From positions 1 through 64,000 of the IMG/VR virus record IMGVR_UViG_3300042386_001233: a DNA stretch of 64,000 nt, one strand, 5' to 3'. Made by a program: the position numbers and the translations under genes. This document shows, piece by piece, positions 4,372 through 33,068 of this stretch. A model generated the notes under the pieces. It was not told the DNA's origin and made no database searches. It worked only from the letters and a program-made list of their open reading frames with translations. Positions within the stretch are counted from its first letter, which is position 1. The number at the start of each line of letters is the position of its first letter.

Positions 4372-4375
4372 TATA

Positions 4376-4585: not shown

Positions 4586-5115
4586 GCAATAATCCATATA
4601 TCAATATAATTTCTCCAGAATTTAAAGGATTATTTAATAATGCCATAGATGCACTATTACAACAAACAGCGCTTACTGTTCAATGCCGATTAAGATACTC
4701 TGGACAACAAAACTCTACCTTTTGTCCAAATTGTGTGTTCGATGCGATATCCCAACTATCCTCAAATATTTACAACGGAACAGGATCTAATCCATTTCCA
4801 GAAGGATCAATTTGTCCAGTATGTATGGGCATGGGTATGATGTTAAGTGATAGTTCTGAGCTTGTATCTTTAGCTTGTATTTTTGATAGTAAATATTTTG
4901 TAAATCTATCATCCAAAACGCTCAATATTCCAGCCGGAACAATTCAAACTATTTGTCATACAACTCTACTCCCTAAAATTAGAAACGCCAACGATATTGT
5001 TGTAGACACTACTCTTGAACAGTATGGTAATTACGTATACCAAAGAGCTGGTGATCCAGAACCTATAGGATTTGGGGACAATAGATATATAGCTACGATA
5101 TGGAGCAGAAAATGA
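4582..5115 (+). CDS. Putative head-closure/neck protein with CxxC..CxxCxGxG zinc-ribbon insertion
   Basis: 177 aa; CPNC at 4723 and CPVCMGMG at 4813; beta-rich C-terminus; position in the neck block. Confidence 0.5.
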   Translation: MSNNPYINIISPEFKGLFNNAIDALLQQTALTVQCRLRYSGQQNSTFCPNCVFDAISQLSSNIYNGTGSNPFPEGSICPVCMGMGMMLSDSSELVSLACIFDSKYFVNLSSKTLNIPAGTIQTICHTTLLPKIRNANDIVVDTTLEQYGNYVYQRAGDPEPIGFGDNRYIATIWSRK

Positions 5116-13703: not shown

Positions 13704-16700
13704 ATGGCTACAGCTTTTAATTTGACAGCACAACTTAATTTACGCGGTCCAAATAATGTTAACAAGATTGTTGGAGACATTAAGAAACAACTATCTGGCA
13801 TAACTGCTAATGTTAACTTGAAGTTGGACCCTAATGTTGCCAAGAACGTTAAGGCTCTTGATGCTTCGTTAAAATCGTTAAATTCTACATTATCTAGAAC
13901 CTCTACGACAGCAACTTCTGCAGCATCTGCGATATCTTCTTTTGGTAGGGCTGTTAATTCTGTTAGCATAAAAAACATACCGTCACAAATTAATGCCACG
14001 GTATCTAGTATGAATAAGCTAAATAAATCTAGCGGAACCATTGGACAGTCTTTGAATGAAGCAGCAACGGAGATGCAGGAGTTCGGTAAACAAGCAGGAT
14101 TAGCAATTAGACGATTTGCTGCATTTACTGCTGTTACTGGAGTTATTTATAGTTTAACTAATAGTATTAATCAGGGTATTCAGGCTTTTATAGAATATGA
14201 CAAAGAATTAGTTCGTTTACAACAAGTCACAGGTCAAACTGCCGGAGGCTTAAAGCAACTACAAAATTCAATTTCTCAATTAGCAACTGGTTTGGGTGTT
14301 AGTTCAAAAGAATTAACAACAGTATCAGTTACACTAGCACAAGCCGGTTTAAGTGCAAAAGATACCGAAAGAGCCTTAAGAGCATTAGCATTAAGTTCAC
14401 TAGCCCCATCATTTGACGACATGAATGAAACGGTAGAAGGTTCTATTGCTTTGATGAGACAGTTCGGCATTAGTGCTGGACAATTAGAACAAGCCCTAGG
14501 TTCTGTCAACGCTGTTGCTGCTGCGTTCGCCGTAGAAGCCGATGACCTAATTACTGCTATTCAGCGTACCGGCGGTGTGTTTGCTACTGCTAGTAAAGGC
14601 GTTAGTGAAGGAACAGATGCTCTTAATGAATTTATCTCGGTGTTTACTAGCGTGAGAGCAACCACTCGTGAAAGTGCAGAAACTATTGCTACTGGTTTAC
14701 GTACTATCTTTACACGTATTCAGAGAGGTAGCACAATTGATGCCCTTAAGGAGTTCGGTGTTACTCTAACAGACTCAGAGGGCAAATTCGTTGGAGCCTA
14801 TAGAGCCGTACAATTACTAAGTGAAGGATTGTCTAAACTAGATCCAAGAGATATTAAATTTTCTAGAATTGTAGAAGAGTTGGGCGGCTTTAGGCAGATT
14901 GGTAAAGTTATTCCTCTTATCCAACAGTTTTCTGTTGCTCAGAACGCTCTTAAGATAGCACAAACAGGACAATCTTCTTTAGCTAAAGATGCAGCAACAG
15001 CACAATTGTCATTAGCAAATCAAATTCAAAAAGTTCGTGAAGAATTCTTTGCGCTGTTTCGTGAAATTGGACAAAGCAAAGGCTTTCAATCCTTACTCAC
15101 TGGAGTATTAACACTAACAAGAGGACTAATCAAGCTTGCTGATGTTTCAAAGAGTTTGCTACCTGCGTTGAGTGTCGTTTTAGCATTTAAGGGTGCTAGT
15201 GCTTTAACTCAATTTGCTAGCGGTTTCAGCAAGGGTTTCAGGCCGGGTGGTGGTAAACCAGAAAAAGAAAGACCACGATTCGCAGACGGCGGAAGGGTTA
15301 GAAGATTTGCTACTGGTGGTGTAGTGCCCGGTAGTGGTGACAGAGATACTGTTCCAGCTATGCTAACTCCTGGTGAGTTTGTGGTGAGAAAACAAGCAGT
15401 TAAAAGTATTGGAACAGCACATCTACATAGAATAAATAAGCGAGCTAAGGGTGGCCCAATTACAGTAGAAAAATTAAAAGATATTAATCCCAATGCTGTT
15501 CAGCCTGACTATAGAAATACAGAAGAAGCAAAAAATAAAGTAGGAGAAAAAGACCAAACTTGGAGCACATACAGAGATCAAGGCAGGAGAGGGAAGGTCA
15601 GGTCAACAGCTGTTAAATATATGCAGCCAAGAGACGAAGTATACGGAGATGTAGAATACGTACCTATTCCTGATCCTAATAGGTCAGAAGTTGAAAAATA
15701 TTTTGGCAAGATAGTTCTTAAAAAAGGAATTAAGTCTATCAATCCAAAAGATAAGAGAATAAGTACTGCTTATGAAAATTATGCTCAGGATAAAGTAAAA
15801 ACAATAGGAGCTCGGTATAGTGGAGATTATGATCCTTTAGATTTTGAAACCGGAGATGTTAAATTCTATAGTTCTGAAGAAAATATTCAAAAATATGTTT
15901 CGATAAATAAAGTTCTTTCAAAAAGACTCAGACATCAAAATAAAGATAATAGAATTAAATGGCAACCAAACTCTCCAGAACAAAAAGAGTTAGAGCCAAC
16001 AACAATATATCATCCAACAGACTTAACGGAAAATAATAATTTAAAGAAAAGAATTTCAGACTGGATTTTATTATCACAAAATCAAAGAACAACTCAGGCG
16101 ATTAGAGAGGGTGACTCTTTTAGTTTTGGTGGATTAGTTCAAAAATTTGCCGAAGGAGGAGAGGCTGCTAGGATTAGGAGAGTTGGAATTATAGATAGTG
16201 ACGTATTGCGAGATAAGATTAACGCTGAAAAAGTTGCTCAAGGAATGGAGTCAATCGGATCAGATAGTATACAAGACTATACCATACAACTAGCCAAGCT
16301 AGGCGTACAAAAAAGAAAGTCTGGTGACCTCAAAAAGTTTAGAGTTATTGCTGGAGCTGCTGGTAGTGGAAAGAGCAGCTTAGCTACTGGAGTATCTGCT
16401 AATGATAACGCTACTTTGCGAAAAACTATTAGATCTCATATTATAACTCCACAAGATCTGGATAGTGTAGATGAAATTTTAACTATCACAGCAAATGTTA
16501 GTGATGCAAAATTAGAGGGCTATCTTAGAGATGCAGATAGAACATATACCGTCTCATCCTCTACTAAGGCCGAGCAAGATCTAATAAAAAGAAATAAAGA
16601 ATCCAGAGACATCACTGGACAAGGACTTTACGGCAGAGAACCAGGGAAAACAAAGGGCGTTCCTGCAGATTTTGGAGTAGAAGAAGCAACACTAATCGAT

Positions 16701-19700
16701 CAACTAGGATCAAAAAATGTTGTACTAGGAAGAAAAGAAGATGCTGAAGGTAATCTTACAAATAGATTTAGAAGAAAAAGAGAAGATGAATTACCAGAAA
16801 TAGTACAAGCAGAAGGCTTCTATACTGGTGGTTTTGCTCCTCCAACAAGAGGTCACAGAGGCGCTTTTGATACATTGCTAGCAAATGTAATTGCCAAAAA
16901 TCCAAAGGCAACACTAAAAGATATTTTGGTTTCAGTAGCTCCTAATGTTGCGATGGTCGAAGGAAAAGAAGGACTAGAGCACGCTGCTAGATATGGTATT
17001 TTTGATGCTGATTTTAGATCATTATTAGCAGATGTAAACTTTAAAGGAGCTATGATCTCTCAGGATGCACAGTCTACTCCTGGAATACTTCCCAAGGTTA
17101 TGGAAGTTCCTAGCGAAAACAATCGTAGAAAATTTGCTCGACTCAAAGGAGCGATGGCTATTACTTCCGGAAAAGAACAGGGAGTTTTAGGAAAATACGA
17201 GAGAGCAGGAATTGAGGTTACTGACATTCCAAGAATAGAGGATATTAGTGCTACTAAAGTAAGAGAATTATTATTTAGTCAAAATTATACTGAACTTGAT
17301 AAAATAGTTAATCCTGAAGTTGGGGCAATACTTAAAGGTAATCAACCACAGCTTAAAAATAGATCAGTAATGGTTCCTGTTTTATTAGAAGAGCTTCATA
17401 AAGCAGCCGAAGCTAATACTGTTTTAGCTAACCAAAAAGCAGATGATATACTTGCTAATGCTCCTGGCGGTCCATATGCTAATGTTAGTAAAAAATTAAA
17501 AACAGAACACCCAGATATTGCAGCACAAGTTAAGTCTATTAGAGAACAAAGAGATCAGTTTAAGAAGTCTATTTCTGGAGCTAAAGCCCATTCTATTATT
17601 AGTGAATTAGCAGCTGCCTATCCTGAAATTTATGGTATTGATCCTTCTCGTAGAGCAGCAACAGCAGCCGCTAGCATATCAGCAGAAGACGCTAGGTCTC
17701 ATCTAGGAGATAGAGTAAAATCGCTAGTGTCAGGAAGAGGCGCAGCAACTCCAGAACCTTCTCTGCTAGAGAGTATCAAGCAAAATGTTACCAAACAATT
17801 AGCAATTCCAAAGGGTTCAGGTACTTTACCCACAGACTCTAAGACAATTACTAGCGCCTTCTTAAATACCAAGATACCGTCTGATCCAACATTCGGTATG
17901 TTTTCAGGCAAGACTATAGATCCTGGTATAGTAAAGAAAGTTTGGAGACAAACATATCCAGGACTATCAGAAGATAAGACAGCAAGCTATATTGCTTTAA
18001 AAGAATGGCTAGAAGCACAATATAATACTCGTACCGGCGCCAAAACTGAAAAACTGTCTCAGGCCATTCAAGAATCTAAAATGGTTGGATTGGTTGGTAT
18101 GCTACCAATCGGACACGAAAAACTATCTGGCCCATTTACATGGATGCTGGGTAAAAATGCTGCTGGCGAGGATGTTTCCGTTACTGCTTCAATTATAGAA
18201 AGAGGATTGGGCAAACAATACGAGGAAGAGATTAAAAAAGCACAGAGTCACGCTGAACAAGGATCAGAACTTCTAGCTTCTGGACTAGCGTCTAAGATGA
18301 AAAAACGACCAGAGTCTTTAAGATCTCTTGATAAAGCTCAGCTTGAAACTTTAGGTCAGGGAAATATTGAAGGAGCATATGTTGAACAGGCATTAGCCAG
18401 ACTATGGGCCAATTTAGACAATGTTAGTACCAGAACTCGACCAATAGACTACCCAGACGGTCTCGGAGAATCTGCTGAACTATTTCCTGGCATATCTCCA
18501 ACTATGCCGACAGAAGTTAAGAGAACAATTAATAGTGATAGTAGAAGTGATGCCATAGAAGAATTCCAAAGGTATTTCAGACTTATTCATGCAATACCAG
18601 AACCAAAAGCCAAGAAAGAAGCAGTTAAAGCATTAGCTTCAGGCGGAGAAGTACAAAGATTCATGGCTGGTGGAGTAGCAACCAAAACCAGAAAACCAAA
18701 AGAAGTTTTTGGAACTGGAGAAACAGCATTCCCATCAAGAATATCAAAAAAATATGCCGAAGAACAACATTCAGCTAGTGAAAGCTTAAGAGCTAAATTA
18801 TCATGGGATAAGTATCCTAAAGATGAAAGAATAATGGTTAACGAAGATAAGGTACAAGAAGCCTATCAACAACCATTTGATAGAGATAGGTTTACCTCAT
18901 CATTTAAAGAAAAAATTAGTCGTGACTCGCTCTTTGAGAGAATGTCAGATTTTGCTAAGTTTATAGGACTGCCACAAGAAGACTTATCTCTAGCACTACC
19001 ATTACAATTGGATTTTGGAGCAAGCTCAAGAGGGGGTGGGTTGGGAATGTTCTCTGCTGCTGAATTCGGAAAAGGAGCATCTGGAATTAGGCCATATGAA
19101 GGCTATGATCTATCTAAATTTGGATATGGAGAAAAAGAAAAGCAAGAATCTTATGGATTAGAAAAACTTATAGCAGCAAAAGAAAAAGAAATAAAAAAGA
19201 TTAGAAAAACTCCTACTGAAACTTTTGATGATGGTAGTTTCTCTTTTGACAGTGAGGCATTTCAGAAGACTTATATTGAGTTAGATAATCTTAAAAATAG
19301 ATTTTTTAGATTAAAAGACCTAAAACGTGAAGCAGAAAAGGCGGCCCTTGCTGAACAAAATACCATTTCCTCAGCTACTGGTCGTGGAACCATCGGCTTT
19401 GCTCCTTCTATGGGATATGCTTCCACCACACAGAATCACTCGCTATATCATGAAATGACACATCAGCTATTTGAAGGATTAAGAACAAGATCAGCAGAAA
19501 GCTTTACTAAATATAGAGATAGAGTATCGTCTTTATTCTCTGGAGATAATGACGATTTAGCAGATGCTTTTGACTCTTTAACGGCAGTAACAGCAGGCGG
19601 CGGATATACTAGTGCTGATGTTGTATATGGTAGAAGTTATAAGTCAAATAACTTAAGTCAAATACTTTCAAGCTATTATCGTCAGAATCTTGATTCTTCT

Positions 19701-25700: not shown

Positions 25701-28700
25701 GATAAAGATAAAGATGGAAATATAACACAAGAGGAATGGAAAAATAATGTATTAGCACGAGCAAAGGTTCGTAAGCTAGAAAATACCATAAAAATAATTG
25801 AAAAAGAAATAGCTGAAGGAAAACCTGTTCCTGTAAACTTTGAAGCAATGAAAAGAACACTAGGTTTCGCCAAAATAGATGCAGGTATGGCCGCTGCTCC
25901 TGGTGACAATAAGGCTTTTATCGCTAGACAAAAACGTATTGATGATAATATGAATAAAAGATTATTGGGGGGTGGTTCTATTAATAATCCTGATGGTTCT
26001 TATGTTTTTAATAGAGAACTTAATAAGATTTATGATCGTAGATCAGCTTTTGAAGAAGAAAGAAGAGCACAGAGAGCTAAGGACGAAAACGCAACGGACG
26101 AAGAAATATTTGATCGCACAGTAGAGGCCTATGGGGCTGGAGACTCTAACTATTGGCGCAACAGTATGGGAGTCACCGAACTGCCAAATGTTTATGATAA
26201 TTCTAGAACTTTAGACGTTATTCGCAATGAGAGTGATCTCTCCAGTAAGGGAGATCCTAATGGAGAAAAAACTAGAGCATATATAGACGGATATATACAA
26301 TCACAAGGAGCAAGACAACAAGCGGACAGAGTGGCTCGTGGTATTGGGGCAGAGATTGATTCTCCAGATATTGCCGTAACAGGAACTCAGGGACCAGTAG
26401 ATAATCTTAACTATTTAATAGACCAAAAAGAAAAGGGCAGAGTAGCAGAAAAAGCAGCAAGAGACGAAAACTTTAAACAAGAGAATAAAAATAGAGAAGG
26501 CGCTGATGCAAGACAGGCAAAATTGGATCAAAGAGATAAAGAACTAGGTATAGATACTAGCGGCATTAATCGAGATATATATGAGAGTGGTGGAGGTTTT
26601 TCAAATCAGCCAGGAAGTGGCAGAAAAGTTACGATAGAAGAACAAAAACAAAGAAAAAGAGAAAAGGCTATAGCTGCTAGGTTTTCATTTACAGATAAAA
26701 CAGGTAAATACTCCACTACTGGAACTATTGACAAAGTGGATTTTGAAAAAGGTACTGTTAGAATAGCTAAAATTGATCCAAAAACTGGTGAGCCTATTAC
26801 TAGAACCGTTCCGGTTTTTGCCGATGGCCAAACAGAAGAAGAGATTAAAGCTTCTGGTAGAGATCCCGAAAGATTTAAGGTTGGAGAGAAAGAAGAACAA
26901 GTATACACTACTGTACCCCTAGACAAACTTAGTGACCAGTCCAGAGACAAGGCCAGATCCCATGGTTTGGAAAAAGAAGCAGACAAAGCCAAGGCTGGTG
27001 AAAACTTCTCAATAGGGGAGGCTACTGGCAAAAAGCGTACAATATCTGGTAAAATATTCAGAGTAGACGAAAAGGCCGGAACAGCTGTCGTACAAAGAGA
27101 TAGTGGTAAGCTGGTCACTATACCATTAGAGAAACTTGCTCCAGAGTCTAGAAATATAGCACTAGATCAAGCCAAGACAGCTACTACTGTTACTGATTTA
27201 ACGCAGAAACAAATGGATGCTGATGTTGGTAATATTGATGTTACTTCATCATTACCAGAACCACCAATTCCATTAGCTGAAGACTTTACTGATAGAGCAA
27301 ATGAAGTTCGTCAAGAGACGATGAATAATGCTGCTTTAGAACAGACAAAGATGGATCAGTTGCCGATGATGTCTGAGCCGGTACCAACTTCGGGCACTAT
27401 TGATCCTATTACTGGCAAGGTTGTTGGAAATAATGTTTCTATGGACTTGAATCCAGATGGAACTCGTACACCAGAACAATTAAACATATTAAGTCAGCAA
27501 GCTACCAGAGATGCCGATAGGCGTAATTCTAACGCAAGATATGAGGAGCTTAGAGGTCGATCAAAAGCAGAGGATGCATACGACAGATCATGGCTTGGAG
27601 AAAACTGGCCCAAAGAATGGGGAGGAGTACAAAAACCAAAACGAAGATTAACTACAAAAGAACTAGAAGAACTTGGAGCGATGGAAAGCGAGAGAGGTGT
27701 TCCTGCATTATCAAGATTAGGAGCTAATACACGAGCAGAACAAACAAGAAGATCAGCAGGATTAGACGAAGCACAAATTGAAAGTTTGAGTCAACAAAAA
27801 ACAGAACAGTTTAAAGCTGAACTTGAGAAAAAAAATGACGCAGAAGGTGGGGTGGCTGTTGGACTAGCTGCTCAAAGAGCAGTAGTTCCATTATTGGCTG
27901 GTGCTACAGCTATTGCCGCCGCTCCTGCTTTAGTTCCAGCAGGAATAATTGGGGCTGGACTTACTATTGCTGGGGGTGTTACTGCTAGTTTGGGCGCTAA
28001 TAAATTACAAGATATGGCATTAGAAGGTACGGATTTTGATAAGAGACAAAGAGAATTGGCAGAAAAAAGGCCAGGAGCAACTGCTGTTGGTTCTTTATTG
28101 CCAGGATTACTAACGGGCAATCCACTGACTGGTGCAACCACTATGGGTCGAGCACTAGCAACAAGAGCTGCTAGCGGAGCTACTGAAGCAGCATTAGGGG
28201 CCGGTATCAGAGGAGCAACTAGTGGTGGGGATTTTGGTACTTATGAAGATTTCCGGAATGACTTTCTTTCTGGAGTTATTCTTCCAACGTCTAATTTTGG
28301 AAGTAAGGGATCCAGAAATTATAGTCGTCCAGAAGGTCCAGCAAAACCTACGTCTTTAAAGGATGTTGCAGCAACAGTTAGAGATGAACAACTAGCAATC
28401 AGAGAAGAAAACGTTCTTGCTGGTAATGAGAGAATAGCAACTAAACGAAAACAAGACGAAGTTAGAAAAGCGGCACAAGCAGAACAAAGAATCAAAGATG
28501 AAGTAGAAGCAGTGAAAGAATCAGGAAGAGAAAAGGCTGTTTTTGATTTTATGAAGCCACTCATTACTCGTCCAGATAAGAGTAATAGCCCTATAGTAAA
28601 GGGCGTAGCAGACATGGTACTTAATCATCATAGAGATTTGATGGCTAGAGTAAAATCTAAGGATATATTAGAAAAAGGTCGTGGTCTGAATGATGAGCAG

Positions 28701-31700
28701 ATTACAACACAGCTTACAGATGCTGGAATAGATCCTGAACGAGCAGCAGCTATAGTTAGAAAAAGAACAGAAGCCAATAATAAAGCACAATCTGATCTTG
28801 CTTTGGAAAGAGGAACAAGAAGAGCGGAAGCTAAAGAGAGACTAGATGCTGAATATAGAAAAGAAGTTGAAGGAGTTACAGATCCTAAAGAAACAGCAAA
28901 AATAAAGGCTAGATTCCAAGAACAATTAAATAAAGAAGCTTCTTTGATTGATGTCGATATTAACGACAAGACGTCAGCAAATAAAGCCGGTATAACAGTT
29001 CAAGAGCTGAAACAACAAAGAGCAGCAGAAGCTCAAGCCAAAGATAAAGCAGAGTCTGATAAACTAATACAAGAGTTTGATTCTACTCTAGGATCAAGTA
29101 AGCCAACAACTATTGATAATCTTCCTATGGGAGAACCTCTTGATTTAGGTGTGGACCCGCTTGCGCCAATAACATCTGCCAAAGATAATGCTGCTACTAC
29201 GGCAGCTAGTACAAAACCAGTCGATGCTGCAACAGTAGCAGCAAAAAACCAGACAGTAGTCAAGGCAGCAGAACAAGAAAATACATCTTCGCTACAAACA
29301 TCAGCGATACCGCAGCCCAAACCCTATAATCCTACAGATTATCCTATTATGGATAGTATTATGAGAGGAGGAAAGAACGGCCATTATGGTCCGATGGGTA
29401 CTACTAATATAACAGGTAAACAAAATATTCATGGAATAAGCGGATGGAAAACTAGACTCATACCAAAAGACGACGCGTCTGCAGCAAAAATTAAAGAATT
29501 TTTAGATACTCATCCAGATATAGGGGAATATAAGTTAGCATTAAATGAGGGACCAGTACCAGTATTTAGTGTCTATTTCAAAAAGGGCACCAAAGATGAA
29601 GCACTATCTTTTGCACAAGCTAGTGAAAAAGGACTAAAAGATAGTTTAGATCCTCGTTTATATCAGGGTGCTGATACTCTGCTAGAAGGGACAAATATTT
29701 CCGCAAGATTTGATGCTAGAGATCTAAAGTATGAATCAGCATCATCAATTATAGATAGACAACTAGAGAATTCTCCTTTTAGTAGAGGATTTTTAAAAGC
29801 TGAAGAACTGAATCTACAAATACCTGCATCAAATACGGCAGCTGGGTCAACGGCTAGCAGAGCAATGCCAAGCATTACTGCTGGCACCAGAGGAGTACCA
29901 GATACTGGGTATGTTGATTGGTTAAAAACAAAAAAGTTTTTGGCGAAAGATCCTAAAAAGATAGCTAGTCTAGATGCAGAGATACAAAGAGCTACTAACG
30001 TAGCAGATGATTGGCTAAAAGAAAATATGTCAGACCTCTACAGCTCATCTGCTGAACGAACAACTAGAGAATCAACTACTCAAACCGGTGGGGTAAAACC
30101 ACAACAACAAGCAGTAGTTGAAACAGCAATCAGAGATGCCACAAGCACACCAACCAAATCCGGTTTTGTTCGAGACAAATCGTTATCGACAGACAAAGTA
30201 GATGATCTAGCTTCTGCCGGATTTGGAGTTATAAGTCCAGACCAAGAAGTAGAAAGTGTTATAAGAGGAGCAAGAGAAAATTCTCTTGGCGTTTTAACTA
30301 AACCAGCAGCGTTATTACAGCCAGAAACATACCAAAAATATGCAGACCAACTATTAGAACTAGAAAAATCAGGAAAAATAAAAATAACCAAAGGCGCTTC
30401 ATTTGGTACTAGTGGCCAACCAAGTATATTTGTAGGAAAACCAGAAAATGTAGATACTCTTGCAAAAGCTTTTGAATCTGAAACAGCAAGAACACGAGAA
30501 ATGGGGGTTCCAGCATCAGATGAATTTCACGAAACGGTAGGAAAGGCACTAGGATATAGTAAAGATAGTAGAGAACTATTTAGATTAAGAAAAGATTGGG
30601 ATAAAGCAGGATTAGATATAGATACTATTCAAGATAGATTACAAACTAGCCGTGGTGCTGCTGCTAGATATATGGTATCAGAAATTAATAAGGCCAAAGA
30701 ACAAGCATCAGTCGAGCAAGGAGTAAAAGAATCAACAAACCCGCCCATCAAACCTCCTATTGATGGAGATGAATTTGAATTAGGAAACTTGGGAGATGAA
30801 ACCCCAGAAGAAAAGGCTCGACTAGACGCACTATATCCTCCGGGTTCTGAGGGATTTTTGGGCCCAATAAAGCCAGATAATGTATTACCTGAAGCAAGAG
30901 CAGAATCACAAGCTCGCACAGTCGAAACCAAACCATCCTCTTTTGAACAAAATCCAGAAGACTTTACAAAGCTTATTGATGAAACTCTTTCTCCATTCCC
31001 AGAAGACTTTTTCCCAGATGGTTCTTCAAAACCAAATGCTAGAGTAGAAGCAGAAATTGATAGTAATACAGTAAACGCTTCTTCTCCAGAAGCTTTAAAA
31101 GCCTCTGCAGAAGCTCAACAAAAACTAGCAGCACAAAAATTAGCAGCAAAATCTCCAGAACAAATATCTGTAGAAAAAACATATGGTCCTTTATATAGAG
31201 AAGCTAAAAAAGCCAACGATACAGCAGAGATGGCCAGAATACGATCAGAAGCTAATGCAGAATTTAAGAAACGCTCTCAAGAAGCTTCAACCAGAGCTGA
31301 AGATAAAAAGAATAGTTTCCTTCCTGTTATGGGTAAGGTCTTAAAGATAGCTGCCCCCATTGGAACTGCTATAGGTTATGGATTAGGATCATTATTAACC
31401 AGGGATAAGAGAAAAGAAGAACCTCAAGATCCAGCCTCTAAACTAAAAAATGCCTCTAGTTTACAGGAAGTCTACGATTTAATAAGCGCAAACGATAGGG
31501 GAACAAAAGGCTTTAGCGCAGTAGAAATTGCCATGAAGCTTAGAGAAATAGACCCTAAAGCATATGACAAGAGCGGTGATGAGTATGTTAATCTAGGAGA
31601 ATTGGCAGGAATGCCAGATAGTGCATATGATGCATACTTAGACAGATTGAAAGACAGGGCAGCAACAGCAAAACCCGTCAACTATCCAGATGTTCCATCT

Positions 31701-33068
31701 TTAGACAAAGATAAAAATATTAAACCATCTTTTGGCGCATATATACCATCTCTAGAGAGTACAATGGCTCCTCAACAGTATGGGGCCGGAGTTTATCAGG
31801 GTCCGTCATCCATGCCCACATTTGATTTAACAAAAACTAAGACCGATGCTGCAGCAATGCCAGAAGTTAATGTCAAAGATAATAATGCTGCTCCGATGCC
31901 AGGAACTAAGAAACCAGTAAAGAAAGCTCTCGGGGGTTTAATCTATGCTTCTGAAGGAATGAAGATTCCTAGACCTAATACAATACTATCTAGTTCACAA
32001 TCTAATAGTGGACTATATGATAGATATGCCTCTTCAGTATCACAACCAATAGATATTGGCAAGTCTTCAGAAAATTCTTTTTCAAGATATATAAAATCTG
32101 GTGGTAGAAGAATGTCTGACAACGTCGAGGTTAGACCCAAATTAACAACAGATGAAGTACTACAGTATTTTGAAAACAAAGAAGCAAAAGAACGTCGTGA
32201 AGGTGCTCCTCCTGCTGGCGGTAGGGTTCAATATGCAACTGGTGGAATAGTATACGCAAATAATGGAGCACTAATAAATGCCCAACCAATGGGAACTGAC
32301 ACTGTTCCAGCAATGTTAACTCCTGGCGAGTTTGTTGTCAAAAAAGAACAAGCTCAAAAACACGCTCCAATACTACATGCTATAAATAGTGGAGCATATA
32401 GTAGGGGTGGTATTGTTAATTATTTGGCTAATGGTGGTGTTGTTAATCCAAACTATTTATCGTATGGCGGTTATCCCGACATGGGAGATTTACAAAATCG
32501 TCGCAATCCTTTAAAGGAGATGAGTCAGAGAGTAGCCGAATATAATGCTTCTATGGCTCCTCAACCAGTACCAATGCCCGCTCCAGCACCGGTTCAAGCA
32601 CCCTCTCCAGCACCAGCGGGTGGTGTATCTAGTAATGTTGGTATAGATGTAGCTAATTTACAGTCCATAGTAACTAATTTGCAGAAAACGGTCAATGACT
32701 TTGGAGCATCGATACCTTCACTTTCACAAGTGGCAGAAAGTATGAATACTGGTTTTAGTTCTTTCGTAACAGGAGGATCCCAAATAGGACAAATGTTAAA
32801 TAGCGCTACAGCGGGTCTACAACAAGTTAATCTTCCTGATAGGATTAGACTAGAAGGTTCAGTAAGCAATAACGTAAATATTAACGGTGCTGAAGCAGCC
32901 GCTAGAGTTATGGATACTATGGGTGGGGCTATTCAACAGGGAGCAAATGAACAAATAGGCAGATTCGCAGGAGCTATTAATCGAGGTATTGGTAATTTGG
33001 GTGAAGGAGCATTAGGTCCAGATACTGGTCAAATTATGGGTCAAATAGGTGGTTCAAATTATGTTTAA
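13704..33068 (+). CDS. Giant tape measure protein (6454 aa) with TP901-type core and many inserted domains
   Basis: N-terminal TMP core (LQQVTG..VSVTLAQAG..AVAAAFAVEADDL..TIATGLRTIFTRIQ); repeated AxGG and DTVPAMLTPGEFVV TMP motifs; long helical segments; position after tube and chaperone genes. Confidence 0.9.
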   Translation: MATAFNLTAQLNLRGPNNVNKIVGDIKKQLSGITANVNLKLDPNVAKNVKALDASLKSLNSTLSRTSTTATSAASAISSFGRAVNSVSIKNIPSQINATVSSMNKLNKSSGTIGQSLNEAATEMQEFGKQAGLAIRRFAAFTAVTGVIYSLTNSINQGIQAFIEYDKELVRLQQVTGQTAGGLKQLQNSISQLATGLGVSSKELTTVSVTLAQAGLSAKDTERALRALALSSLAPSFDDMNETVEGSIALMRQFGISAGQLEQALGSVNAVAAAFAVEADDLITAIQRTGGVFATASKGVSEGTDALNEFISVFTSVRATTRESAETIATGLRTIFTRIQRGSTIDALKEFGVTLTDSEGKFVGAYRAVQLLSEGLSKLDPRDIKFSRIVEELGGFRQIGKVIPLIQQFSVAQNALKIAQTGQSSLAKDAATAQLSLANQIQKVREEFFALFREIGQSKGFQSLLTGVLTLTRGLIKLADVSKSLLPALSVVLAFKGASALTQFASGFSKGFRPGGGKPEKERPRFADGGRVRRFATGGVVPGSGDRDTVPAMLTPGEFVVRKQAVKSIGTAHLHRINKRAKGGPITVEKLKDINPNAVQPDYRNTEEAKNKVGEKDQTWSTYRDQGRRGKVRSTAVKYMQPRDEVYGDVEYVPIPDPNRSEVEKYFGKIVLKKGIKSINPKDKRISTAYENYAQDKVKTIGARYSGDYDPLDFETGDVKFYSSEENIQKYVSINKVLSKRLRHQNKDNRIKWQPNSPEQKELEPTTIYHPTDLTENNNLKKRISDWILLSQNQRTTQAIREGDSFSFGGLVQKFAEGGEAARIRRVGIIDSDVLRDKINAEKVAQGMESIGSDSIQDYTIQLAKLGVQKRKSGDLKKFRVIAGAAGSGKSSLATGVSANDNATLRKTIRSHIITPQDLDSVDEILTITANVSDAKLEGYLRDADRTYTVSSSTKAEQDLIKRNKESRDITGQGLYGREPGKTKGVPADFGVEEATLIDQLGSKNVVLGRKEDAEGNLTNRFRRKREDELPEIVQAEGFYTGGFAPPTRGHRGAFDTLLANVIAKNPKATLKDILVSVAPNVAMVEGKEGLEHAARYGIFDADFRSLLADVNFKGAMISQDAQSTPGILPKVMEVPSENNRRKFARLKGAMAITSGKEQGVLGKYERAGIEVTDIPRIEDISATKVRELLFSQNYTELDKIVNPEVGAILKGNQPQLKNRSVMVPVLLEELHKAAEANTVLANQKADDILANAPGGPYANVSKKLKTEHPDIAAQVKSIREQRDQFKKSISGAKAHSIISELAAAYPEIYGIDPSRRAATAAASISAEDARSHLGDRVKSLVSGRGAATPEPSLLESIKQNVTKQLAIPKGSGTLPTDSKTITSAFLNTKIPSDPTFGMFSGKTIDPGIVKKVWRQTYPGLSEDKTASYIALKEWLEAQYNTRTGAKTEKLSQAIQESKMVGLVGMLPIGHEKLSGPFTWMLGKNAAGEDVSVTASIIERGLGKQYEEEIKKAQSHAEQGSELLASGLASKMKKRPESLRSLDKAQLETLGQGNIEGAYVEQALARLWANLDNVSTRTRPIDYPDGLGESAELFPGISPTMPTEVKRTINSDSRSDAIEEFQRYFRLIHAIPEPKAKKEAVKALASGGEVQRFMAGGVATKTRKPKEVFGTGETAFPSRISKKYAEEQHSASESLRAKLSWDKYPKDERIMVNEDKVQEAYQQPFDRDRFTSSFKEKISRDSLFERMSDFAKFIGLPQEDLSLALPLQLDFGASSRGGGLGMFSAAEFGKGASGIRPYEGYDLSKFGYGEKEKQESYGLEKLIAAKEKEIKKIRKTPTETFDDGSFSFDSEAFQKTYIELDNLKNRFFRLKDLKREAEKAALAEQNTISSATGRGTIGFAPSMGYASTTQNHSLYHEMTHQLFEGLRTRSAESFTKYRDRVSSLFSGDNDDLADAFDSLTAVTAGGGYTSADVVYGRSYKSNNLSQILSSYYRQNLDSSRGTTPIPEDITKNLASLSTQSTAAKRAREYRPINPQVNEALLQGGAKFGMTQEKINRMEDNGKEEFLTTLIEKAPQLDQNLQGILDSTLTELLSGAGIQRQKYASGGKASRRVDFEAGVGQSPFGGSVSKRLSQSIYNLQKNTGLSDSEFNEIKKTADTYGYNEEEFKEYLAKRIQEKKNKEGLRTNPSALAQQLMPQTRVSTPRQLALAQALKDTSNDIGYRPSTLETIAQARTDVGNATRYAVGGIAKVGKKEDKQYGQISITEDAGMINVGYQKGDNRQGYATGYKMRNNLYYVGLSKATKGYGPRLYDVLMEAVTEKGAMLTSDRSSVSEDAKRVWEYYFKNRGDVKKTPLKPSDWTVNSNLIDPKLYGKKETWPPATDPAWTLQTGYSKSPKLITNTNEVIRKRSGGRLSFETGGTVPALVSNGEAYIPPKIAKRIGYSNLNRMNQADRNGMSKFSSGGISVFKGPGTGTSDSIPANLPVGSFILREKATKALGFNKGGAVPAQRFATGGGVTSMIMEWLSSDMTARTKPKMAPRPDVVNRASVVASNDTTKALDILVKSLNQLGLSAANSADILNKGGQVSYKTIQKALAEDIKRLKISGASIQSIVAAETTLANIRKKSKEEVTKQKNIQGLTSARGNSSTKIVGGQTIGDLQAGSGAGQQAIETQAQMLAAARIRRRGGKVTEKQRSEIMESSYIDSASRITGIKKKEFKAAGISGGDIQKYIAESMKDRKSLAQMDKQLIALKTNELTNSAAYIAASNAEQKRMLTEVQQATKEEISTRRKIINDLAAQNGTKGVGAAGLRDTRNSPILNQIKGFIKSPGKVMGGISAAAGLTAGASDMIAKNIYNMSTTEGQGKAAKTSAAIQSSGTILSTGMAAASQMAAIPVIGPYVAALTAVGTAAAAAADYFYDFTGAQKAATVEFERSVRAKEIGIAMDGLDRAFQNFEKDMGNITLQKALEQAIGNTSSLQIKDNMAERDNAKAEFSLKNRSWSDIFSGNFKGSAQMDALEQGAMDSEMSQKLSPISDKAMALYDKQISSGKSIEDIVNNVRTGNKDAVNAGAAVAFNANPKLWSELEQKVKASGDASEANVLKIKRGIVARELLTNAELQAAVKRSKLERDMEASNRAGRRLAETFDHISETIDQSIQRMQRESEIRQAQANDRVEARRGNAGFDERAVNNRNVGVLTNPKAYQNDPRRIEEAIRAGSSGMSPELAQKMAGGARLEATLPNVMRNAISTELKSNASLGLDEAADAARRKGTEAIRNSGLSEADQKVAIDKLNARIEDEKKKVQDNEKGTPAEQVDSFTDSISDLGPEIANIFGNAGKKLDDIIQARQGIYDTFAKNLQAASEAAKKAREFFSKARDIRYDAGMDLREAQTGVGESFSEAKAKSDSSIARLTGGVTDPQAIGRNIDALMARRDQQMKDRDAALSNPNLTQDQQKDAATKFAKDIQATNNALNDNREALDKLANSAEVAQKALDEVKNIRGLQQDRENFVNQLLTNTPEEADKLNQTFIRLQRNLSGGLNNASNQRDARNAFNDTLRRTGNLREATRAGNTVLADQRKQTLQLMQDPGFRGMMTLNMKNQGMNDQQIDKRFRDQEGMLMQQMAIESGLINNPMVRQALAAKQDPNADPAMKRAADQFLQATGLQAKASEEQGRLELANVQNLLVTATDELRMSIDTLTTTINGSLGKDGERVPGVAGPVVPVPAGARGVARPPRPMATGGKVKTQYASTGQLIDFSPKGTDTVPAMLTPGEFVVNARSTAKHLPLLKAINSGAGVDATSNMSKGGVVYLDNGGLIDEFRKIDANKSNFLEVGEIDLKMIQLLDRDKDNKVSFGEYSSRVKSDGSSGSSRSGSGSSVKSGFKAQDMSFEQYYNNRAQKYAKRYQGTGDEVPRDTDKFANGGMVTPYYLAEGTNRPLSRPVMVALPPKKDPIETARAARKQGVPTKRRPSLVPGDPRAKDAEPSFFRLDLNEDGILDRKEGYPYQDLDKDKDGNITQEEWKNNVLARAKVRKLENTIKIIEKEIAEGKPVPVNFEAMKRTLGFAKIDAGMAAAPGDNKAFIARQKRIDDNMNKRLLGGGSINNPDGSYVFNRELNKIYDRRSAFEEERRAQRAKDENATDEEIFDRTVEAYGAGDSNYWRNSMGVTELPNVYDNSRTLDVIRNESDLSSKGDPNGEKTRAYIDGYIQSQGARQQADRVARGIGAEIDSPDIAVTGTQGPVDNLNYLIDQKEKGRVAEKAARDENFKQENKNREGADARQAKLDQRDKELGIDTSGINRDIYESGGGFSNQPGSGRKVTIEEQKQRKREKAIAARFSFTDKTGKYSTTGTIDKVDFEKGTVRIAKIDPKTGEPITRTVPVFADGQTEEEIKASGRDPERFKVGEKEEQVYTTVPLDKLSDQSRDKARSHGLEKEADKAKAGENFSIGEATGKKRTISGKIFRVDEKAGTAVVQRDSGKLVTIPLEKLAPESRNIALDQAKTATTVTDLTQKQMDADVGNIDVTSSLPEPPIPLAEDFTDRANEVRQETMNNAALEQTKMDQLPMMSEPVPTSGTIDPITGKVVGNNVSMDLNPDGTRTPEQLNILSQQATRDADRRNSNARYEELRGRSKAEDAYDRSWLGENWPKEWGGVQKPKRRLTTKELEELGAMESERGVPALSRLGANTRAEQTRRSAGLDEAQIESLSQQKTEQFKAELEKKNDAEGGVAVGLAAQRAVVPLLAGATAIAAAPALVPAGIIGAGLTIAGGVTASLGANKLQDMALEGTDFDKRQRELAEKRPGATAVGSLLPGLLTGNPLTGATTMGRALATRAASGATEAALGAGIRGATSGGDFGTYEDFRNDFLSGVILPTSNFGSKGSRNYSRPEGPAKPTSLKDVAATVRDEQLAIREENVLAGNERIATKRKQDEVRKAAQAEQRIKDEVEAVKESGREKAVFDFMKPLITRPDKSNSPIVKGVADMVLNHHRDLMARVKSKDILEKGRGLNDEQITTQLTDAGIDPERAAAIVRKRTEANNKAQSDLALERGTRRAEAKERLDAEYRKEVEGVTDPKETAKIKARFQEQLNKEASLIDVDINDKTSANKAGITVQELKQQRAAEAQAKDKAESDKLIQEFDSTLGSSKPTTIDNLPMGEPLDLGVDPLAPITSAKDNAATTAASTKPVDAATVAAKNQTVVKAAEQENTSSLQTSAIPQPKPYNPTDYPIMDSIMRGGKNGHYGPMGTTNITGKQNIHGISGWKTRLIPKDDASAAKIKEFLDTHPDIGEYKLALNEGPVPVFSVYFKKGTKDEALSFAQASEKGLKDSLDPRLYQGADTLLEGTNISARFDARDLKYESASSIIDRQLENSPFSRGFLKAEELNLQIPASNTAAGSTASRAMPSITAGTRGVPDTGYVDWLKTKKFLAKDPKKIASLDAEIQRATNVADDWLKENMSDLYSSSAERTTRESTTQTGGVKPQQQAVVETAIRDATSTPTKSGFVRDKSLSTDKVDDLASAGFGVISPDQEVESVIRGARENSLGVLTKPAALLQPETYQKYADQLLELEKSGKIKITKGASFGTSGQPSIFVGKPENVDTLAKAFESETARTREMGVPASDEFHETVGKALGYSKDSRELFRLRKDWDKAGLDIDTIQDRLQTSRGAAARYMVSEINKAKEQASVEQGVKESTNPPIKPPIDGDEFELGNLGDETPEEKARLDALYPPGSEGFLGPIKPDNVLPEARAESQARTVETKPSSFEQNPEDFTKLIDETLSPFPEDFFPDGSSKPNARVEAEIDSNTVNASSPEALKASAEAQQKLAAQKLAAKSPEQISVEKTYGPLYREAKKANDTAEMARIRSEANAEFKKRSQEASTRAEDKKNSFLPVMGKVLKIAAPIGTAIGYGLGSLLTRDKRKEEPQDPASKLKNASSLQEVYDLISANDRGTKGFSAVEIAMKLREIDPKAYDKSGDEYVNLGELAGMPDSAYDAYLDRLKDRAATAKPVNYPDVPSLDKDKNIKPSFGAYIPSLESTMAPQQYGAGVYQGPSSMPTFDLTKTKTDAAAMPEVNVKDNNAAPMPGTKKPVKKALGGLIYASEGMKIPRPNTILSSSQSNSGLYDRYASSVSQPIDIGKSSENSFSRYIKSGGRRMSDNVEVRPKLTTDEVLQYFENKEAKERREGAPPAGGRVQYATGGIVYANNGALINAQPMGTDTVPAMLTPGEFVVKKEQAQKHAPILHAINSGAYSRGGIVNYLANGGVVNPNYLSYGGYPDMGDLQNRRNPLKEMSQRVAEYNASMAPQPVPMPAPAPVQAPSPAPAGGVSSNVGIDVANLQSIVTNLQKTVNDFGASIPSLSQVAESMNTGFSSFVTGGSQIGQMLNSATAGLQQVNLPDRIRLEGSVSNNVNINGAEAAARVMDTMGGAIQQGANEQIGRFAGAINRGIGNLGEGALGPDTGQIMGQIGGSNYV

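What the first reader, a model, noticed from the sequence alone, without database searches (positions are those of the whole stretch)
15279..32471. Paired AxGG motifs and a five-copy DTVPAMLTPGEF box punctuate the TMP at module boundaries
About a dozen paired motifs occur: FADGG-FATGG (15279), FSFGG-FAEGG (16119), LASGG-FMAGG (18633), YASGG-FEAG (20007), RSGG-FETGG (20925), FNKGG-FATGG (21198), MATGG-YASTG (24891), MSKGG-LDNGG (25086), FANGG-LAEG (25431), ALGG-YASEG (31926), YATGG-YANNG (32232) and YSRGG-LANGG-LSYGG (32397). There are also singles at 15441, 20427 and 21078. The box recurs at 15345, 24966 and 32298 (conserved at DNA level) and degenerately at 20961 and 21129. The motif is common once or twice in TMPs; here many copies bracket the inserted domains. 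They may be protease sites releasing the cargo, assembly anchors, or microhomology for cassette exchange.
Basis: partly seen in the sequence, partly recalled or inferred. Interest (0 to 1): 0.72.

Follow-up and report, generated by a model that had tools for sequence, protein, structure and literature searches.

The report
Glycine-pair joints delimit tape-measure cargo cassettes

Summary
Every motif sits in frame at the stated coordinates in one intact ORF (13704-33068, 6,454 aa) with a TP901-type tape measure (TMP) N-terminus. Phi-x-x-GG occurs 27 times against 6.6 expected, and only in this gene.

There are two elements:
- A roughly 80-aa module: Phi-A-x-GG, then the DTVPAMLTPGEFVV hairpin and helix, then Phi-x-x-GG. 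The window has five copies. No Pfam or NCBIfam model covers it. A profile finds it in 24,776 protein clusters. Ordinary siphophage TMPs carry it 50-150 aa from the C-terminus.
- A short Phi-A-x-GG-x-V joint, often doubled at a 9-aa spacing. Its count rises with TMP length (r=0.88).

Comparison with 119 giant homologues shows:
- The nine best-supported homology breakpoints all lie at GG motifs.
- Of 76 clean indels, 62 have GG at both ends (null 1.7).
- Cassette order is permuted in 36 homologues.
- A close relative lacks window aa 2107-2419, joined exactly at YA[ST]GG | TVPAL.

DNA identity between copies is no higher than protein conservation predicts. "Conserved at DNA level" and homology-driven exchange are therefore not supported. 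Cleavage and anchoring remain untested. My best reading is protein-level cassette delimiters, or joints. This is a new variant of known modular or polyvalent virion proteins.

The parts
13704..33068 (+). Single intact ORF of 6,454 aa: a giant tape measure protein (TMP) carrying cargo cassettes
   Evidence: PF10145 at aa 188-382, E 3.8e-21. TIGR01760 E 5.5e-26. Six PHROG TMP families. The same 6,454-aa protein is on record on 32 contigs.
14265..14849 (+). TP901-type TMP core domain (aa 188-382)
   Evidence: covered by 114 of 119 homologues
15249..15488 (+). Module A (aa 516-595): FADGG, FATGG, the DTVPAMLTPGEFVV box, a helix ending in IN, then AKGG. It marks the end of the conserved N-terminal core.
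   Evidence: HMM i-E 2.9e-23. Homologue coverage falls from 109 to 38 just after it. Boundaries at aa 513 (35 homologues) and 586 (49).
15489..16118 (+). Cassette B (aa 596-805), function unknown, present in 34 of 119 homologues
16119..16160 (+). Doubled GG joint FSFGG-LVQK-FAEGG (aa 806-819)
   Evidence: Boundary at aa 809 is supported by 90 HSP ends. The DNA homology block with relative L009 ends at 16166.
16161..18632 (+). Cassette C (aa 820-1643): P-loop (zeta-toxin/AAA_33-like) kinase plus an HxGH cytidylyltransferase-like domain and extra sequence
   Evidence: Walker-A-like and HxGH-like strings can be read. ESM Atlas leads score 0.86-0.88 to phage Zeta_toxin/AAA_33/CTP_transf_like clusters, which is a lead only. 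Order is swapped with cassette D in many homologues.
18633..18674 (+). Doubled GG joint LASGG-EVQR-FMAGG (aa 1644-1657)
   Evidence: Boundary at aa 1650 has 81 HSP ends. L009 DNA homology resumes at 18618.
18675..20006 (+). Cassette D (aa 1658-2101), contains an HExxH string; possibly related to large-polyvalent-protein domains
   Evidence: Sequence. Atlas leads to LPD23/LPD1 score only 0.76-0.79, which is weak.
20007..20021 (+). Single GG joint YASGG (aa 2102-2106); left edge of a 313-aa insertion
   Evidence: boundary at aa 2112 has 71 HSP ends
20022..20960 (+). Cassettes E and F (aa 2107-2419), absent from relative L009. They hold a helical domain (aa 2133-2194) and a GNAT-like alpha/beta domain (aa 2255-2394), separated by YAVGG (20427-20441) and ending in FETGG.
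   Evidence: L009 reads ...QRQK-YATGG-TVPALVSNGE..., joining the two flanks at the GG. AF2 pLDDT is 80-86 and 64-80 for the two domains. Foldseek matches to GNAT are weak but consistent, best E 7e-3.
20904..21260 (+). Two degenerate tandem modules B1 and B2 (aa 2401-2464 and 2453-2519) with RSGG, FETGG, FSSGG, FNKGG and FATGG
   Evidence: HMM i-E 3.6e-12 and 2.8e-11. Each box is modelled as a beta-hairpin plus helix. Boundaries at aa 2418 (78 ends) and 2519 (13 ends).
21261..24872 (+). Backbone segment (aa 2520-3723): long, largely helical and Ala/Gln/Lys-rich, with a hydrophobic stretch near aa 2830-2920. It has almost no GG joints (one in 1,200 aa).
   Evidence: Sequence. Coverage rises to 105-112 of 119 homologues over aa 3100-3800.
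24873..25160 (+). Module C1 (aa 3724-3819): MATGG, YASTG, box, helix, MSKGG, LDNGG
   Evidence: HMM i-E 5.9e-35. Coverage drops from 111 to 16 after it. Boundary at aa 3809 has 90 ends.
25161..31883 (+). Hypervariable C-terminal cargo region (aa 3820-6060), shared with only 2-16 of 119 homologues. It holds EF-hand-like loops (aa 3831-3851 and 3998-4014), the FANGG joint at 25431-25445, and hydrophobic segments at aa 4715-4830.
   Evidence: Coverage. EF-hand_5 E 9.9e-6, just under the Pfam cut-off, and a weak holin-like hit. A sub-cassette (aa 5095-5454) sits upstream of the backbone in P0030 and P0057.
31884..31967 (+). Partial module (aa 6061-6088): ALGG-LIYASEG, the N-terminal half of a type-C module without a box
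   Evidence: HMM i-E 0.0025
32199..32471 (+). Module C2 (aa 6166-6256): AGG, YATGG, YANNG, box, helix, YSRGG, LANGG, LSYGG. It sits about 200 aa from the C-terminus, loosely comparable to the sub-C-terminal position of the module in ordinary TMPs (50-150 aa).
   Evidence: HMM i-E 7.5e-38. Boundary at aa 6176 has 60 ends.
32472..33065 (+). C-terminal end of the TMP (aa 6257-6454)
   Evidence: Homologues share a characteristic C-terminal end. In phage Douge the last 42 residues of the TMP plug the baseplate hub (PMC13033339).

Best explanation
The motifs are the visible parts of a two-tier junction system in a modular tape measure protein (TMP).

Tier 1 is a conserved module of roughly 80 aa. 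It runs Phi-A-x-GG(-I/V-I/V-Y-A-x-x-G), a linker, D-[ST]-[VI]-P-A-x-L-[ST]-x-G-E-F-V-V as a beta-hairpin, a helix ending in I-N, then one to three Phi-x-x-GG. It belongs to the TMP backbone:
- About four copies sit at fixed stations: the end of the N-terminal core, before the long helical segment, after it, and near the C-terminus.
- Ordinary siphophage TMPs carry a single copy just upstream of the C-terminal plug.

Tier 2 is a short joint, [KR]-[FLY]-A-x-G-G-x-V, that flanks each passenger cassette on both sides. Where recombination has merged them, one joint remains.

Shown here:
- Cassette gains, losses, replacements and order changes between related phages occur at these joints.
- The joints lie in predicted flexible linkers between folded units.
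- Their conservation is at the protein level, not the DNA level.

Inferred:
- The joints persist because each passenger domain needs a standard, recognisable hinge or turn at both ends to be carried in an extended TMP and to fold on its own after ejection.
- Exchange arises from illegitimate or very short (GGN-GGN) microhomology recombination, followed by selection for in-frame junctions at joints.
- I rank cleavage at the joints second and could not test it. It does not exclude the joint role.
For: - Enrichment: 27 against 6.6 +/- 2.5 in the window protein. The family mean is 23.8 against 7.0 in 120 giant homologues. The enrichment is specific to the TMP within the genome.
- Boundaries: 894 homology-block ends lie a median 14 aa from a motif against 167 in the null, and 51.6% are within 15 aa against a null maximum of 26%.
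- The nine best-supported distinct boundaries all lie at GG motifs. Of 37 distinct boundaries, 9 are within 15 aa against 3.8 +/- 1.6, P about 0.002.
- Indels: of 76 non-redundant clean indels of at least 80 aa, 62 have GG at both ends (null 1.7, maximum 6) and 53 have Phi-x-x-GG at both ends (null 0.36).
- Exact example: L009 joins YATGG directly to TVPALV where the window has 313 extra residues, running from just after YASGG through FETGG. DNA homology blocks end at 16166 and 20020 and begin at 18618 and 20952.
- Cassette order is permuted in 36 of 119 homologues.
- Scaling: joint count against length gives r=0.88, about 4.2 per 1000 aa. Box count stays near 4 (r=0.26). Minimal family members of 2.2-2.5 kaa have four modules at the same stations.
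- Structure: all GG motifs in aa 2095-2525 lie in pLDDT<50 linkers, and each box is modelled as a hairpin plus helix.
- Protein-level constraint: DNA identity among copies equals the synonymous-resampling expectation. Invariant G24, P38, A39 and G44, plus 12 near-invariant positions, across 143 modules.
- Generality: 24,776 clusters match the module profile. It occurs in annotated TMPs of Gordonia, Nodularia, Brevundimonas, Stenotrophomonas, Shewanella and Streptomyces phages. In Gordonia phage BoyNamedSue an SLT lytic transglycosylase domain lies between modules 1 and 2.
Against: - A plain hinge would not need a conserved aromatic, Ala and beta-branched residue. That pattern suggests recognition by a partner or a protease, which I could not identify.
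- Not all boundaries are at motifs. Those at aa 1313, 1531, 2835, 3854 and 6376, supported by 16-28 homologues each, are not.
- The 2,150-aa region aa 3925-6075 has only two Phi-x-x-GG although it probably holds several domains.
- Homologues are related, so boundary counts are not fully independent. Distinct-boundary and de-replicated indel counts reduce this but do not remove it.
- Conserved islands tend to attract HSP ends. The both-ends indel test and the exact L009 junction address this.
- Structure predictions of the isolated module were poor (pLDDT 63; trimer gave no answer). The fold and any partner are unknown.
Confidence: 0.55

Rival explanations
1. Processing sites. A phage or host protease, or an autoproteolytic activity of the module or of the HExxH cassette, cuts at or next to GG and releases individual cargo enzymes during tail maturation or after ejection, as in viral polyproteins.
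For: - The motif has the shape of a protease site: conserved positions before GG and at +2.
- One site flanks each cassette on both sides, and the sites lie in predicted exposed linkers.
- From established knowledge, GG|X cleavage is used by adenain, the ASFV protease, coronavirus PLpro and Ulp/DUB enzymes.
- From established knowledge, the TMPs of lambda (gpH to H*) and T5 (pb2) are C-terminally processed, and the module's usual place is sub-C-terminal.
- Polyvalent phage proteins are proposed to be auto-processed by embedded zincin-like peptidases (PMC5512222). Cassette D carries an HExxH string.
Against: - No C39, C48 or S78 protease family was found in the genome. These are weak negatives in a very divergent phage.
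- The motif is not enriched in any other protein of the phage, including the 2,137- and 2,660-aa ORFs.
- Doubled sites 9 aa apart are unusual for cleavage.
- The aromatic residue is at P5, not P4 as in LxGG sites.
- The TMP is never split into separate genes at joints in the 53 related loci examined.
- There are no cleavage data.
Confidence: 0.25
2. Assembly anchors or staples. The joints and modules are short binding elements. They might pair as beta-strands between the three TMP chains, or dock to the tail assembly chaperone, tail-tube lumen or distal tail ring, keeping the chains in register where bulky cargo is looped out.
For: - Strong protein-level conservation without an autonomous fold fits a fold-on-binding element.
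- The Gly-bounded I/V-I/V-Y-A strands look like beta-strand and turn units.
- Basic residues precede the aromatic.
- Backbone modules sit at fixed stations, including just upstream of the C-terminal plug.
- The TMP of phage Douge, which has two modules, is a trimer seated in the hub.
Against: - The trimer prediction gave no support, though that is not evidence against.
- The modules in Douge are not resolved in the map.
- Joints are nearly absent from the 1,200-aa helical backbone (one copy), so they are not spaced as regular chaperone or tube contacts would be.
- No partner was identified.
Confidence: 0.2
3. DNA-level recombination signal. The motif-coding DNA is kept similar so that homologous recombination between copies shuffles cassettes, and the peptide itself is incidental.
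For: - Breakpoints lie at the motifs.
- HSPs flanking indels overlap by 5-15 aa in the partner, so the repeat is present at both ends.
- GGT is somewhat over-used at motif glycines (54% against 36% gene-wide).
Against: - Nucleotide identity among copies is not above the synonymous-resampling expectation (P=0.07 and 0.14).
- 7 of 14 identical box codons differ between copies 1 and 2.
- The longest shared exact strings are about 8-11 nt.
- The same peptide is conserved across phages of different phyla with very different GC content, which points to selection on the protein.
Confidence: 0.08
4. Chance or compositional artefact of a Gly-rich giant protein.
For: About six of the 27 Phi-x-x-GG lie inside domains and match the chance expectation.
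Against: 27 against 6.6 +/- 2.5, and no shuffle above 15. The enrichment is family-wide, the spacing is fixed at 9 aa, and the motifs coincide with breakpoints.
Confidence: 0.01

Closest known systems
Enzyme motifs embedded in siphophage tape measure proteins (mycobacteriophage TMP motifs such as TM4 motif 3; T5 pb2 peptidase; P1 Sit transglycosylase). From established knowledge; Piuri & Hatfull 2006 is cited within PMC12619734.
   Same: A TMP carries passenger enzymatic domains that are delivered at infection. In Gordonia phage BoyNamedSue an SLT domain lies between two copies of the same module.
   Different: This protein carries about nine to ten cassettes instead of one or two, mostly non-muralytic (kinase/nucleotidyltransferase-like, GNAT-like, EF-hand). 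A standard flanking joint defines their boundaries. I found no description of such a joint.
Polyvalent proteins of phages and conjugative elements (Iyer et al. 2017, PMC5512222)
   Same: Very large virion-associated polypeptides stringing 2-15 conflict-related domains with extensive mosaicism. Auto-processing by an embedded metallopeptidase has been proposed. Cassette D gives weak leads to LPD domains.
   Different: Those proteins are mostly head-packaged or conjugation-delivered and are not built on a TMP chassis. That paper does not use the word 'linker' (0 occurrences), and no conserved inter-domain delimiter motif came up in the passages I read.
Junction motifs of polymorphic toxins (VENN in CdiA, PxxxxDPxGL in Rhs, pre-toxin domains; Zhang et al. 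2012, PMC3482391). Listed; details from established knowledge.
   Same: A short conserved peptide marks the border between a constant chassis and interchangeable cassettes, and recombination breakpoints coincide with it.
   Different: Those systems have one junction per protein ahead of a C-terminal toxin, with immunity genes and orphan cassettes. Here there are many internal junctions on both sides of each cassette, no immunity genes were seen, and there is no sequence similarity.
TMP-related modular effectors of actinobacterial contractile injection systems (Sle1; Nagakubo et al. 2026, PMC13277306)
   Same: A TMP-derived chassis with exchangeable functional domains is loaded into a tail-like tube. 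Domain swapping reprogrammes function.
   Different: Those are single C-terminal functional domains in a bacterial CIS, not a phage tail. No GG joint is mentioned in the abstract read here.
GG|X cleavage sites of viral polyproteins and Ubl precursors (adenain, ASFV pS273R, coronavirus PLpro LxGG, Ulp1). From established knowledge.
   Same: A hydrophobic residue upstream of Gly-Gly recurs between functional units of a large viral polypeptide.
   Different: The register differs (aromatic at P5, Ala at P4). No clan CE or C39 protease was detected. Cleavage has not been shown.

Membership tests
Phage tail tape measure protein, TP901 family (PF10145 / TIGR01760) | Significant match to the family's core domain above the curated cut-off | tested here: met
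   PF10145 76.3 bits (cut-off 33.2), aa 188-382. TIGR01760 91.4 bits (cut-off 28.8). Six PHROG TMP families.
Phage tail tape measure protein, TP901 family (PF10145 / TIGR01760) | Located in the tail morphogenesis block, upstream of distal and minor tail proteins | tested here: inconclusive
   The second ORF downstream (36618-39110) hits minor-tail PHROGs weakly, E 5e-9. Upstream ORFs have no recognisable tail tube or chaperone hits. No sheath family was found.
Phage tail tape measure protein, TP901 family (PF10145 / TIGR01760) | Its length determines tail length | not testable with these tools
   This needs electron microscopy of virions and deletion mutants. With about 4,000 aa of cargo, the simple 1.5 Angstrom-per-residue rule probably does not apply to the whole chain (inference).
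Polyvalent proteins (Iyer et al. 2017) | Two or more distinct effector or enzymatic domains in one phage polypeptide, with mosaic architectures between relatives | tested here: inconclusive
   Mosaicism and permutation are shown. Domain identities rest on leads only: kinase/NTase Atlas score 0.88, GNAT Foldseek E 7e-3, EF-hand just under the Pfam cut-off, LPD 0.79.
Polyvalent proteins (Iyer et al. 2017) | Delivered into the host with the DNA | not testable with these tools
   Inferred from established knowledge that TMPs are ejected ahead of the DNA.
Protease-processed polyprotein with GG|X sites | A cognate protease is encoded or identifiable | tested here: not met
   No Peptidase_C39, C48 or S78 match in the complete 243.8-kb genome. 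Only three families were tried in a very divergent genome, so this is a weak negative.
Protease-processed polyprotein with GG|X sites | Cleavage products with termini at the sites | not testable with these tools
   No proteomic data are available.
Polymorphic-toxin-type junction motif (VENN / DPxGL / pre-toxin domains) | A conserved short motif at the border of variable cassettes, coinciding with recombination breakpoints | tested here: met
Polymorphic-toxin-type junction motif (VENN / DPxGL / pre-toxin domains) | Sequence homology to a known pre-toxin domain, a C-terminal toxin with an adjacent immunity gene, and orphan cassettes | tested here: not met
   No Pfam or NCBIfam hit on the modules. 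Cassettes are internal. No small immunity-like ORF follows the gene; the next ORF is 1,169 aa.

The most novel reading that the evidence does not exclude
The Phi-A-x-GG joint and the DTVPAMLTPGEFVV module together form a general, portable 'cargo grammar' for tape measure proteins. Under this reading, any domain flanked by joints can be inserted at module stations, carried unfolded in the tail lumen, injected ahead of the DNA, and then released or activated at the joints by an as yet unknown processing or docking activity. That would make these TMPs a tail-lumen counterpart of polymorphic toxin or effector systems, used by a large uncultivated clade of jumbo siphophage-like viruses (inferred from the TMP family and the absence of a sheath-family hit) and, in reduced form, by ordinary siphophages of several bacterial phyla.
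Probability: 0.3. Interest if true: 0.85.

Novelty: new variant of a known kind. Interest (0 to 1): 0.7.

Why it matters
**An unannotated domain.** The work defines a very common TMP element. It occurs in 24,776 protein clusters at 50% identity, has no Pfam or NCBIfam model, and is unresolved in the only solved phage that has it.

**A rule for how giant TMPs grow.** Cassettes are added, lost and reordered at a standard joint. This gives three practical uses:
- Annotators can segment multi-thousand-residue 'hypothetical' TMPs into cargo domains.
- It suggests where foreign domains are likely to be tolerated in a TMP, which is of interest for phage engineering in laboratory systems.
- It makes an open question testable: how bulky enzymes are carried in, and released from, a 4-nm tail lumen.

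**Tail-length prediction.** TMP length cannot be converted naively into tail length for these phages.

Tried and rejected
- Megablast of the whole gene against 50,697 phage records: no match. tblastn of the N-terminal 599 aa found only one distant Rhodococcus phage TMP. No cultured relative is available, or its record is masked.
- A first self-BLASTP for internal repeats printed nothing. I replaced it with a module HMM.
- Pfam, NCBIfam and PHROGs on the modules: no named family. Only PHROG 13338 and 35029 ('unknown') hit.
- AF2 of one module with 143 aligned copies: pLDDT 63, no confident fold. Homotrimer prediction: 'no answer', pLDDT about 30. Neither counts as evidence.
- Profile against PDB sequences: only the Douge TMP matched, and its modules are not modelled in the map.
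- Search for small stand-alone module proteins: 15 hits, mostly fragments on tiny contigs, so the module is essentially TMP-embedded.
I used the search for related loci instead.
- Protease families C39, C48 and S78, and the tail sheath PF04984: no hits.
- Gene fission at joints: none in 53 loci.
- Literature searches for a described TMP GG motif or giant cargo TMP found nothing specific. The 'moraphage' jumbo lineage paper is a different clade with no TMP found.
- I rejected the idea that the boxes are kept similar at the DNA level, and the idea that all 27 motifs are meaningful (about six are background).


Full report
**Setting.** The window is the first 64 kb of a complete 243,821-bp virus record with direct terminal repeats and 35.6% GC.
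- The finding lies in one uninterrupted ORF, 13704-33068 (+), of 6,454 aa. The same protein is on record on about 32 contigs.
- Its N-terminus is a TP901-type tape measure core (PF10145 E 3.8e-21; TIGR01760 E 5.5e-26; six PHROG TMP families).
- The neighbours are very divergent. No sheath family was found. No cultured relative appeared.

**Check of the observation.**
- All 20 coordinates are in frame and read as stated.
- [FYLMW]-x-x-GG occurs 27 times against 6.6 +/- 2.5 in shuffles, and a stricter form 23 times against 3.0 +/- 1.7.
- The excess is confined to this gene. The other 233 ORFs of the genome show 49 against 50.8 expected.
- A module HMM finds three strong and two degenerate copies of the box, plus partial matches at the doubled GG sites.
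- The 'pairing' is a family-wide property. Consecutive motifs are most often exactly 9 aa apart (368 cases), with a logo of [KR]-[FLY]-A-x-G-G-x-V.
- The claim of DNA-level conservation does not hold. The boxes are 64-80% identical over 61 nt. Half of the identical codons differ synonymously, and identity equals what protein sequence plus codon usage predicts.

**What the elements are.** A search restricted to giant proteins returned 332 relatives of 3.6-7.9 kaa from contigs of up to about 250 kb, with mosaic coverage of the query.
- They share the enrichment: a mean of 23.8 motifs against 7.0 expected, and about four boxes each.
- Aligning 143 non-redundant modules gives invariant G24, P38, A39 and G44. 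Near-invariant are A21, D35, T36, L41, P43, E45, F46, V47, L60, N64, G71 and G72.
- A profile of that alignment matches 24,776 of 1.84 billion representative proteins at E<=1e-3, with up to 12 copies per protein.
- No Pfam or NCBIfam model covers the module.

The module also occurs in annotated TMPs of isolated phages of Actinobacteria, Cyanobacteria and Proteobacteria.
- The single copy sits 50-75 aa from the C-terminus in Shewanella S0112, Brevundimonas MaInes, Stenotrophomonas Jojan60 and Streptomyces Frankenweenie.
- Gordonia BoyNamedSue has three copies, with an SLT transglycosylase domain between the first two.
- The only solved phage with the module is mycobacteriophage Douge. There only TMP residues 1658-1699 are modelled, not the modules at 960-1042 and 1412-1462.
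- Small family members of 2.2-2.5 kaa have four modules at fixed stations.
- Across 243 proteins the box count stays near four (r=0.26 with length), whereas the GG-joint count rises linearly (r=0.88, about 4.2 per 1000 aa).

Boxes are therefore backbone features, and short joints come with cargo.

**Do the motifs mark module boundaries?** Yes.
- Coverage of the window protein by 119 homologues steps at aa ~590, 806, 1650, 2102, 2405, 2520, 3805, 6160 and 6260, all of them motif sites.
- The 894 block ends lie a median 14 aa from a motif against 167 aa in 2000 circular shifts. 51.6% are within 15 aa against a null mean of 9.7% and maximum of 26%.
- I then used only HSPs of at least 150 aa and collapsed ends into 37 distinct boundaries. 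The nine best-supported (29-90 homologues each) all sit at GG motifs. Nine of the 37 are within 15 aa of Phi-x-x-GG against 3.8 +/- 1.6 (P about 0.002).
- Several weaker boundaries (aa 1313, 1531, 2835, 3854, 6376) are not at motifs.
- In an all-against-all comparison I extracted 76 non-redundant clean indels: an insert of at least 80 aa in one protein, with flanks at least 55% identical and abutting in the other. Of these, 62 have GG within 8 aa of both ends (null 1.7, maximum 6 in 500) and 53 have Phi-x-x-GG at both ends (null 0.36).
- Cassette order differs in 36 of 119 homologues. The window's cassettes C (aa ~806-1651) and D (aa ~1647-2112) are swapped in many, and a C-terminal sub-cassette (aa 5095-5454) lies upstream of the helical backbone in others.

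At DNA level the closest distinct relative is L009 (81-83% nt).
- It matches window 13704-16166, 18618-20020 and 20952-22831. These blocks end or begin at FAEGG, LASGG, YASGG and FETGG.
- L009 reads ...QRQK-YATGG-TVPALVSNGE.... The window's aa 2107-2419 is therefore a 313-aa insertion that starts right after YASGG and ends with FETGG.

**Structure.**
- An AF2 model of aa 2095-2525 (22-sequence alignment, mean pLDDT 58) has two folded units: aa 2133-2194 (helical, pLDDT 80-86) and aa 2255-2394 (alpha/beta, pLDDT 64-80).
- The alpha/beta unit gives weak but consistent Foldseek matches to GNAT acetyltransferases.
- Each box is modelled as a beta-hairpin plus helix, at only pLDDT 54-68.
- All seven GG motifs in the stretch fall in pLDDT<50 linkers.
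- The isolated module did not fold confidently, and a trimer prediction gave no answer.

**Cargo.** These assignments are leads only.
- Cassette C resembles phage zeta-toxin/AAA_33 kinase plus cytidylyltransferase proteins (Atlas 0.88; a P-loop and an HxGH string are visible).
- Cassette D contains HExxH and weakly resembles large-polyvalent-protein domains.
- EF-hand loops sit just below Pfam cut-offs.

**Mechanism.** What is shown: the motifs delimit exchangeable cassettes, and their conservation is on the protein.
- My preferred reading (0.55) is that the short joint is a standard hinge or turn that every passenger domain carries at both ends. Doubled joints would then be two cassette ends abutting, and single joints merged ones. 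Exchange would arise by illegitimate or GGN-GGN microhomology recombination filtered by selection.
- The full module would be a backbone element inherited from ordinary TMPs, where it lies just upstream of the C-terminal plug.
- Cleavage at the joints (0.25) is attractive because the motif looks like a recognition site and polyvalent proteins are thought to be auto-processed (PMC5512222). However, no protease was found, the motif is absent from other large proteins of the phage, and no gene fission occurs at joints.
- An anchoring or stapling role (0.2) fits an element that folds only on binding, but it has no direct support.
- A DNA-level recombination signal (0.08) is disfavoured.
- These roles are not mutually exclusive.

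**Comparison and novelty.**
- Embedded enzymes in TMPs, polyvalent virion proteins, polymorphic-toxin junction motifs and TMP-derived modular CIS effectors (PMC13277306) are the nearest known things.
- I found no description of a standard delimiter flanking multiple internal cassettes.
- I found no described family for the module in Pfam, NCBIfam or the held literature.
- I rate it a new variant of a known kind, with interest 0.7.

Noticed in passing
window 87-2021 (+): A 644-aa ORF made almost entirely of DUF5122 beta-propeller repeats (11 stretches, E 1e-156). It lies at the start of the record, just after the terminal repeat.
   Followed up: no
window 33089-36598 (+): The 1,169-aa ORF directly downstream of the TMP carries an FGE-sulfatase (formylglycine-generating-enzyme-like) domain at aa 883-1019 (E 8.9e-13). 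This is unusual for a presumed tail-tip protein.
   Followed up: no
window 53285-59698 (+) and genome 59702-67684 (+): Two further giant ORFs (2,137 and 2,660 aa) follow in the same block and have no family hits. They show a slight, non-significant excess of Phi-x-x-GG (5 and 6 against about 2 expected).
   Followed up: partly
window 25161-25430 and 25690-25750 (TMP aa 3831-3851 and 3998-4014): EF-hand-like calcium-binding loops lie inside the TMP cargo region. EF-hand_5 scores 25.2 bits against a cut-off of 25.9. Several homologues carry precomputed EF-hand Pfam hits.
   Followed up: partly
window 27846-28190 (TMP aa ~4715-4830) and 22190-22460 (aa ~2830-2920): Long Ala/Gly-rich hydrophobic stretches. 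The first gives a weak holin-superfamily-III hit (PF07332, E 0.001). They may be the membrane-inserting segments expected of TMPs.
   Followed up: no
window 26670-27170 (TMP aa ~4325-4490): Two similar beta-rich segments of about 45 aa (FSFTDKTGKY... and FSIGEATGKK...) look like a tandem small-domain repeat within the hypervariable cargo.
   Followed up: no
window 13704 versus 14010: One public gene call (P0001, 6,352 aa) starts 102 codons downstream of the first ATG. The 6,454-aa form (P0121) is also on record. Homologues align from residue 1, which favours the longer form.
   Followed up: partly
L002 (Gordonia phage BoyNamedSue TMP) aa 952-2027: An unrelated actinophage TMP has three copies of the module, and an SLT lytic transglycosylase domain (aa 1543-1633) lies between copies 1 and 2. 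The bracket pattern is therefore not confined to the jumbo clade.
   Followed up: partly
window 3364-4371 (+): A 335-aa ORF with a proprotein-convertase P-domain (PF01483, E 7e-8) lies in the upstream structural block.
   Followed up: no
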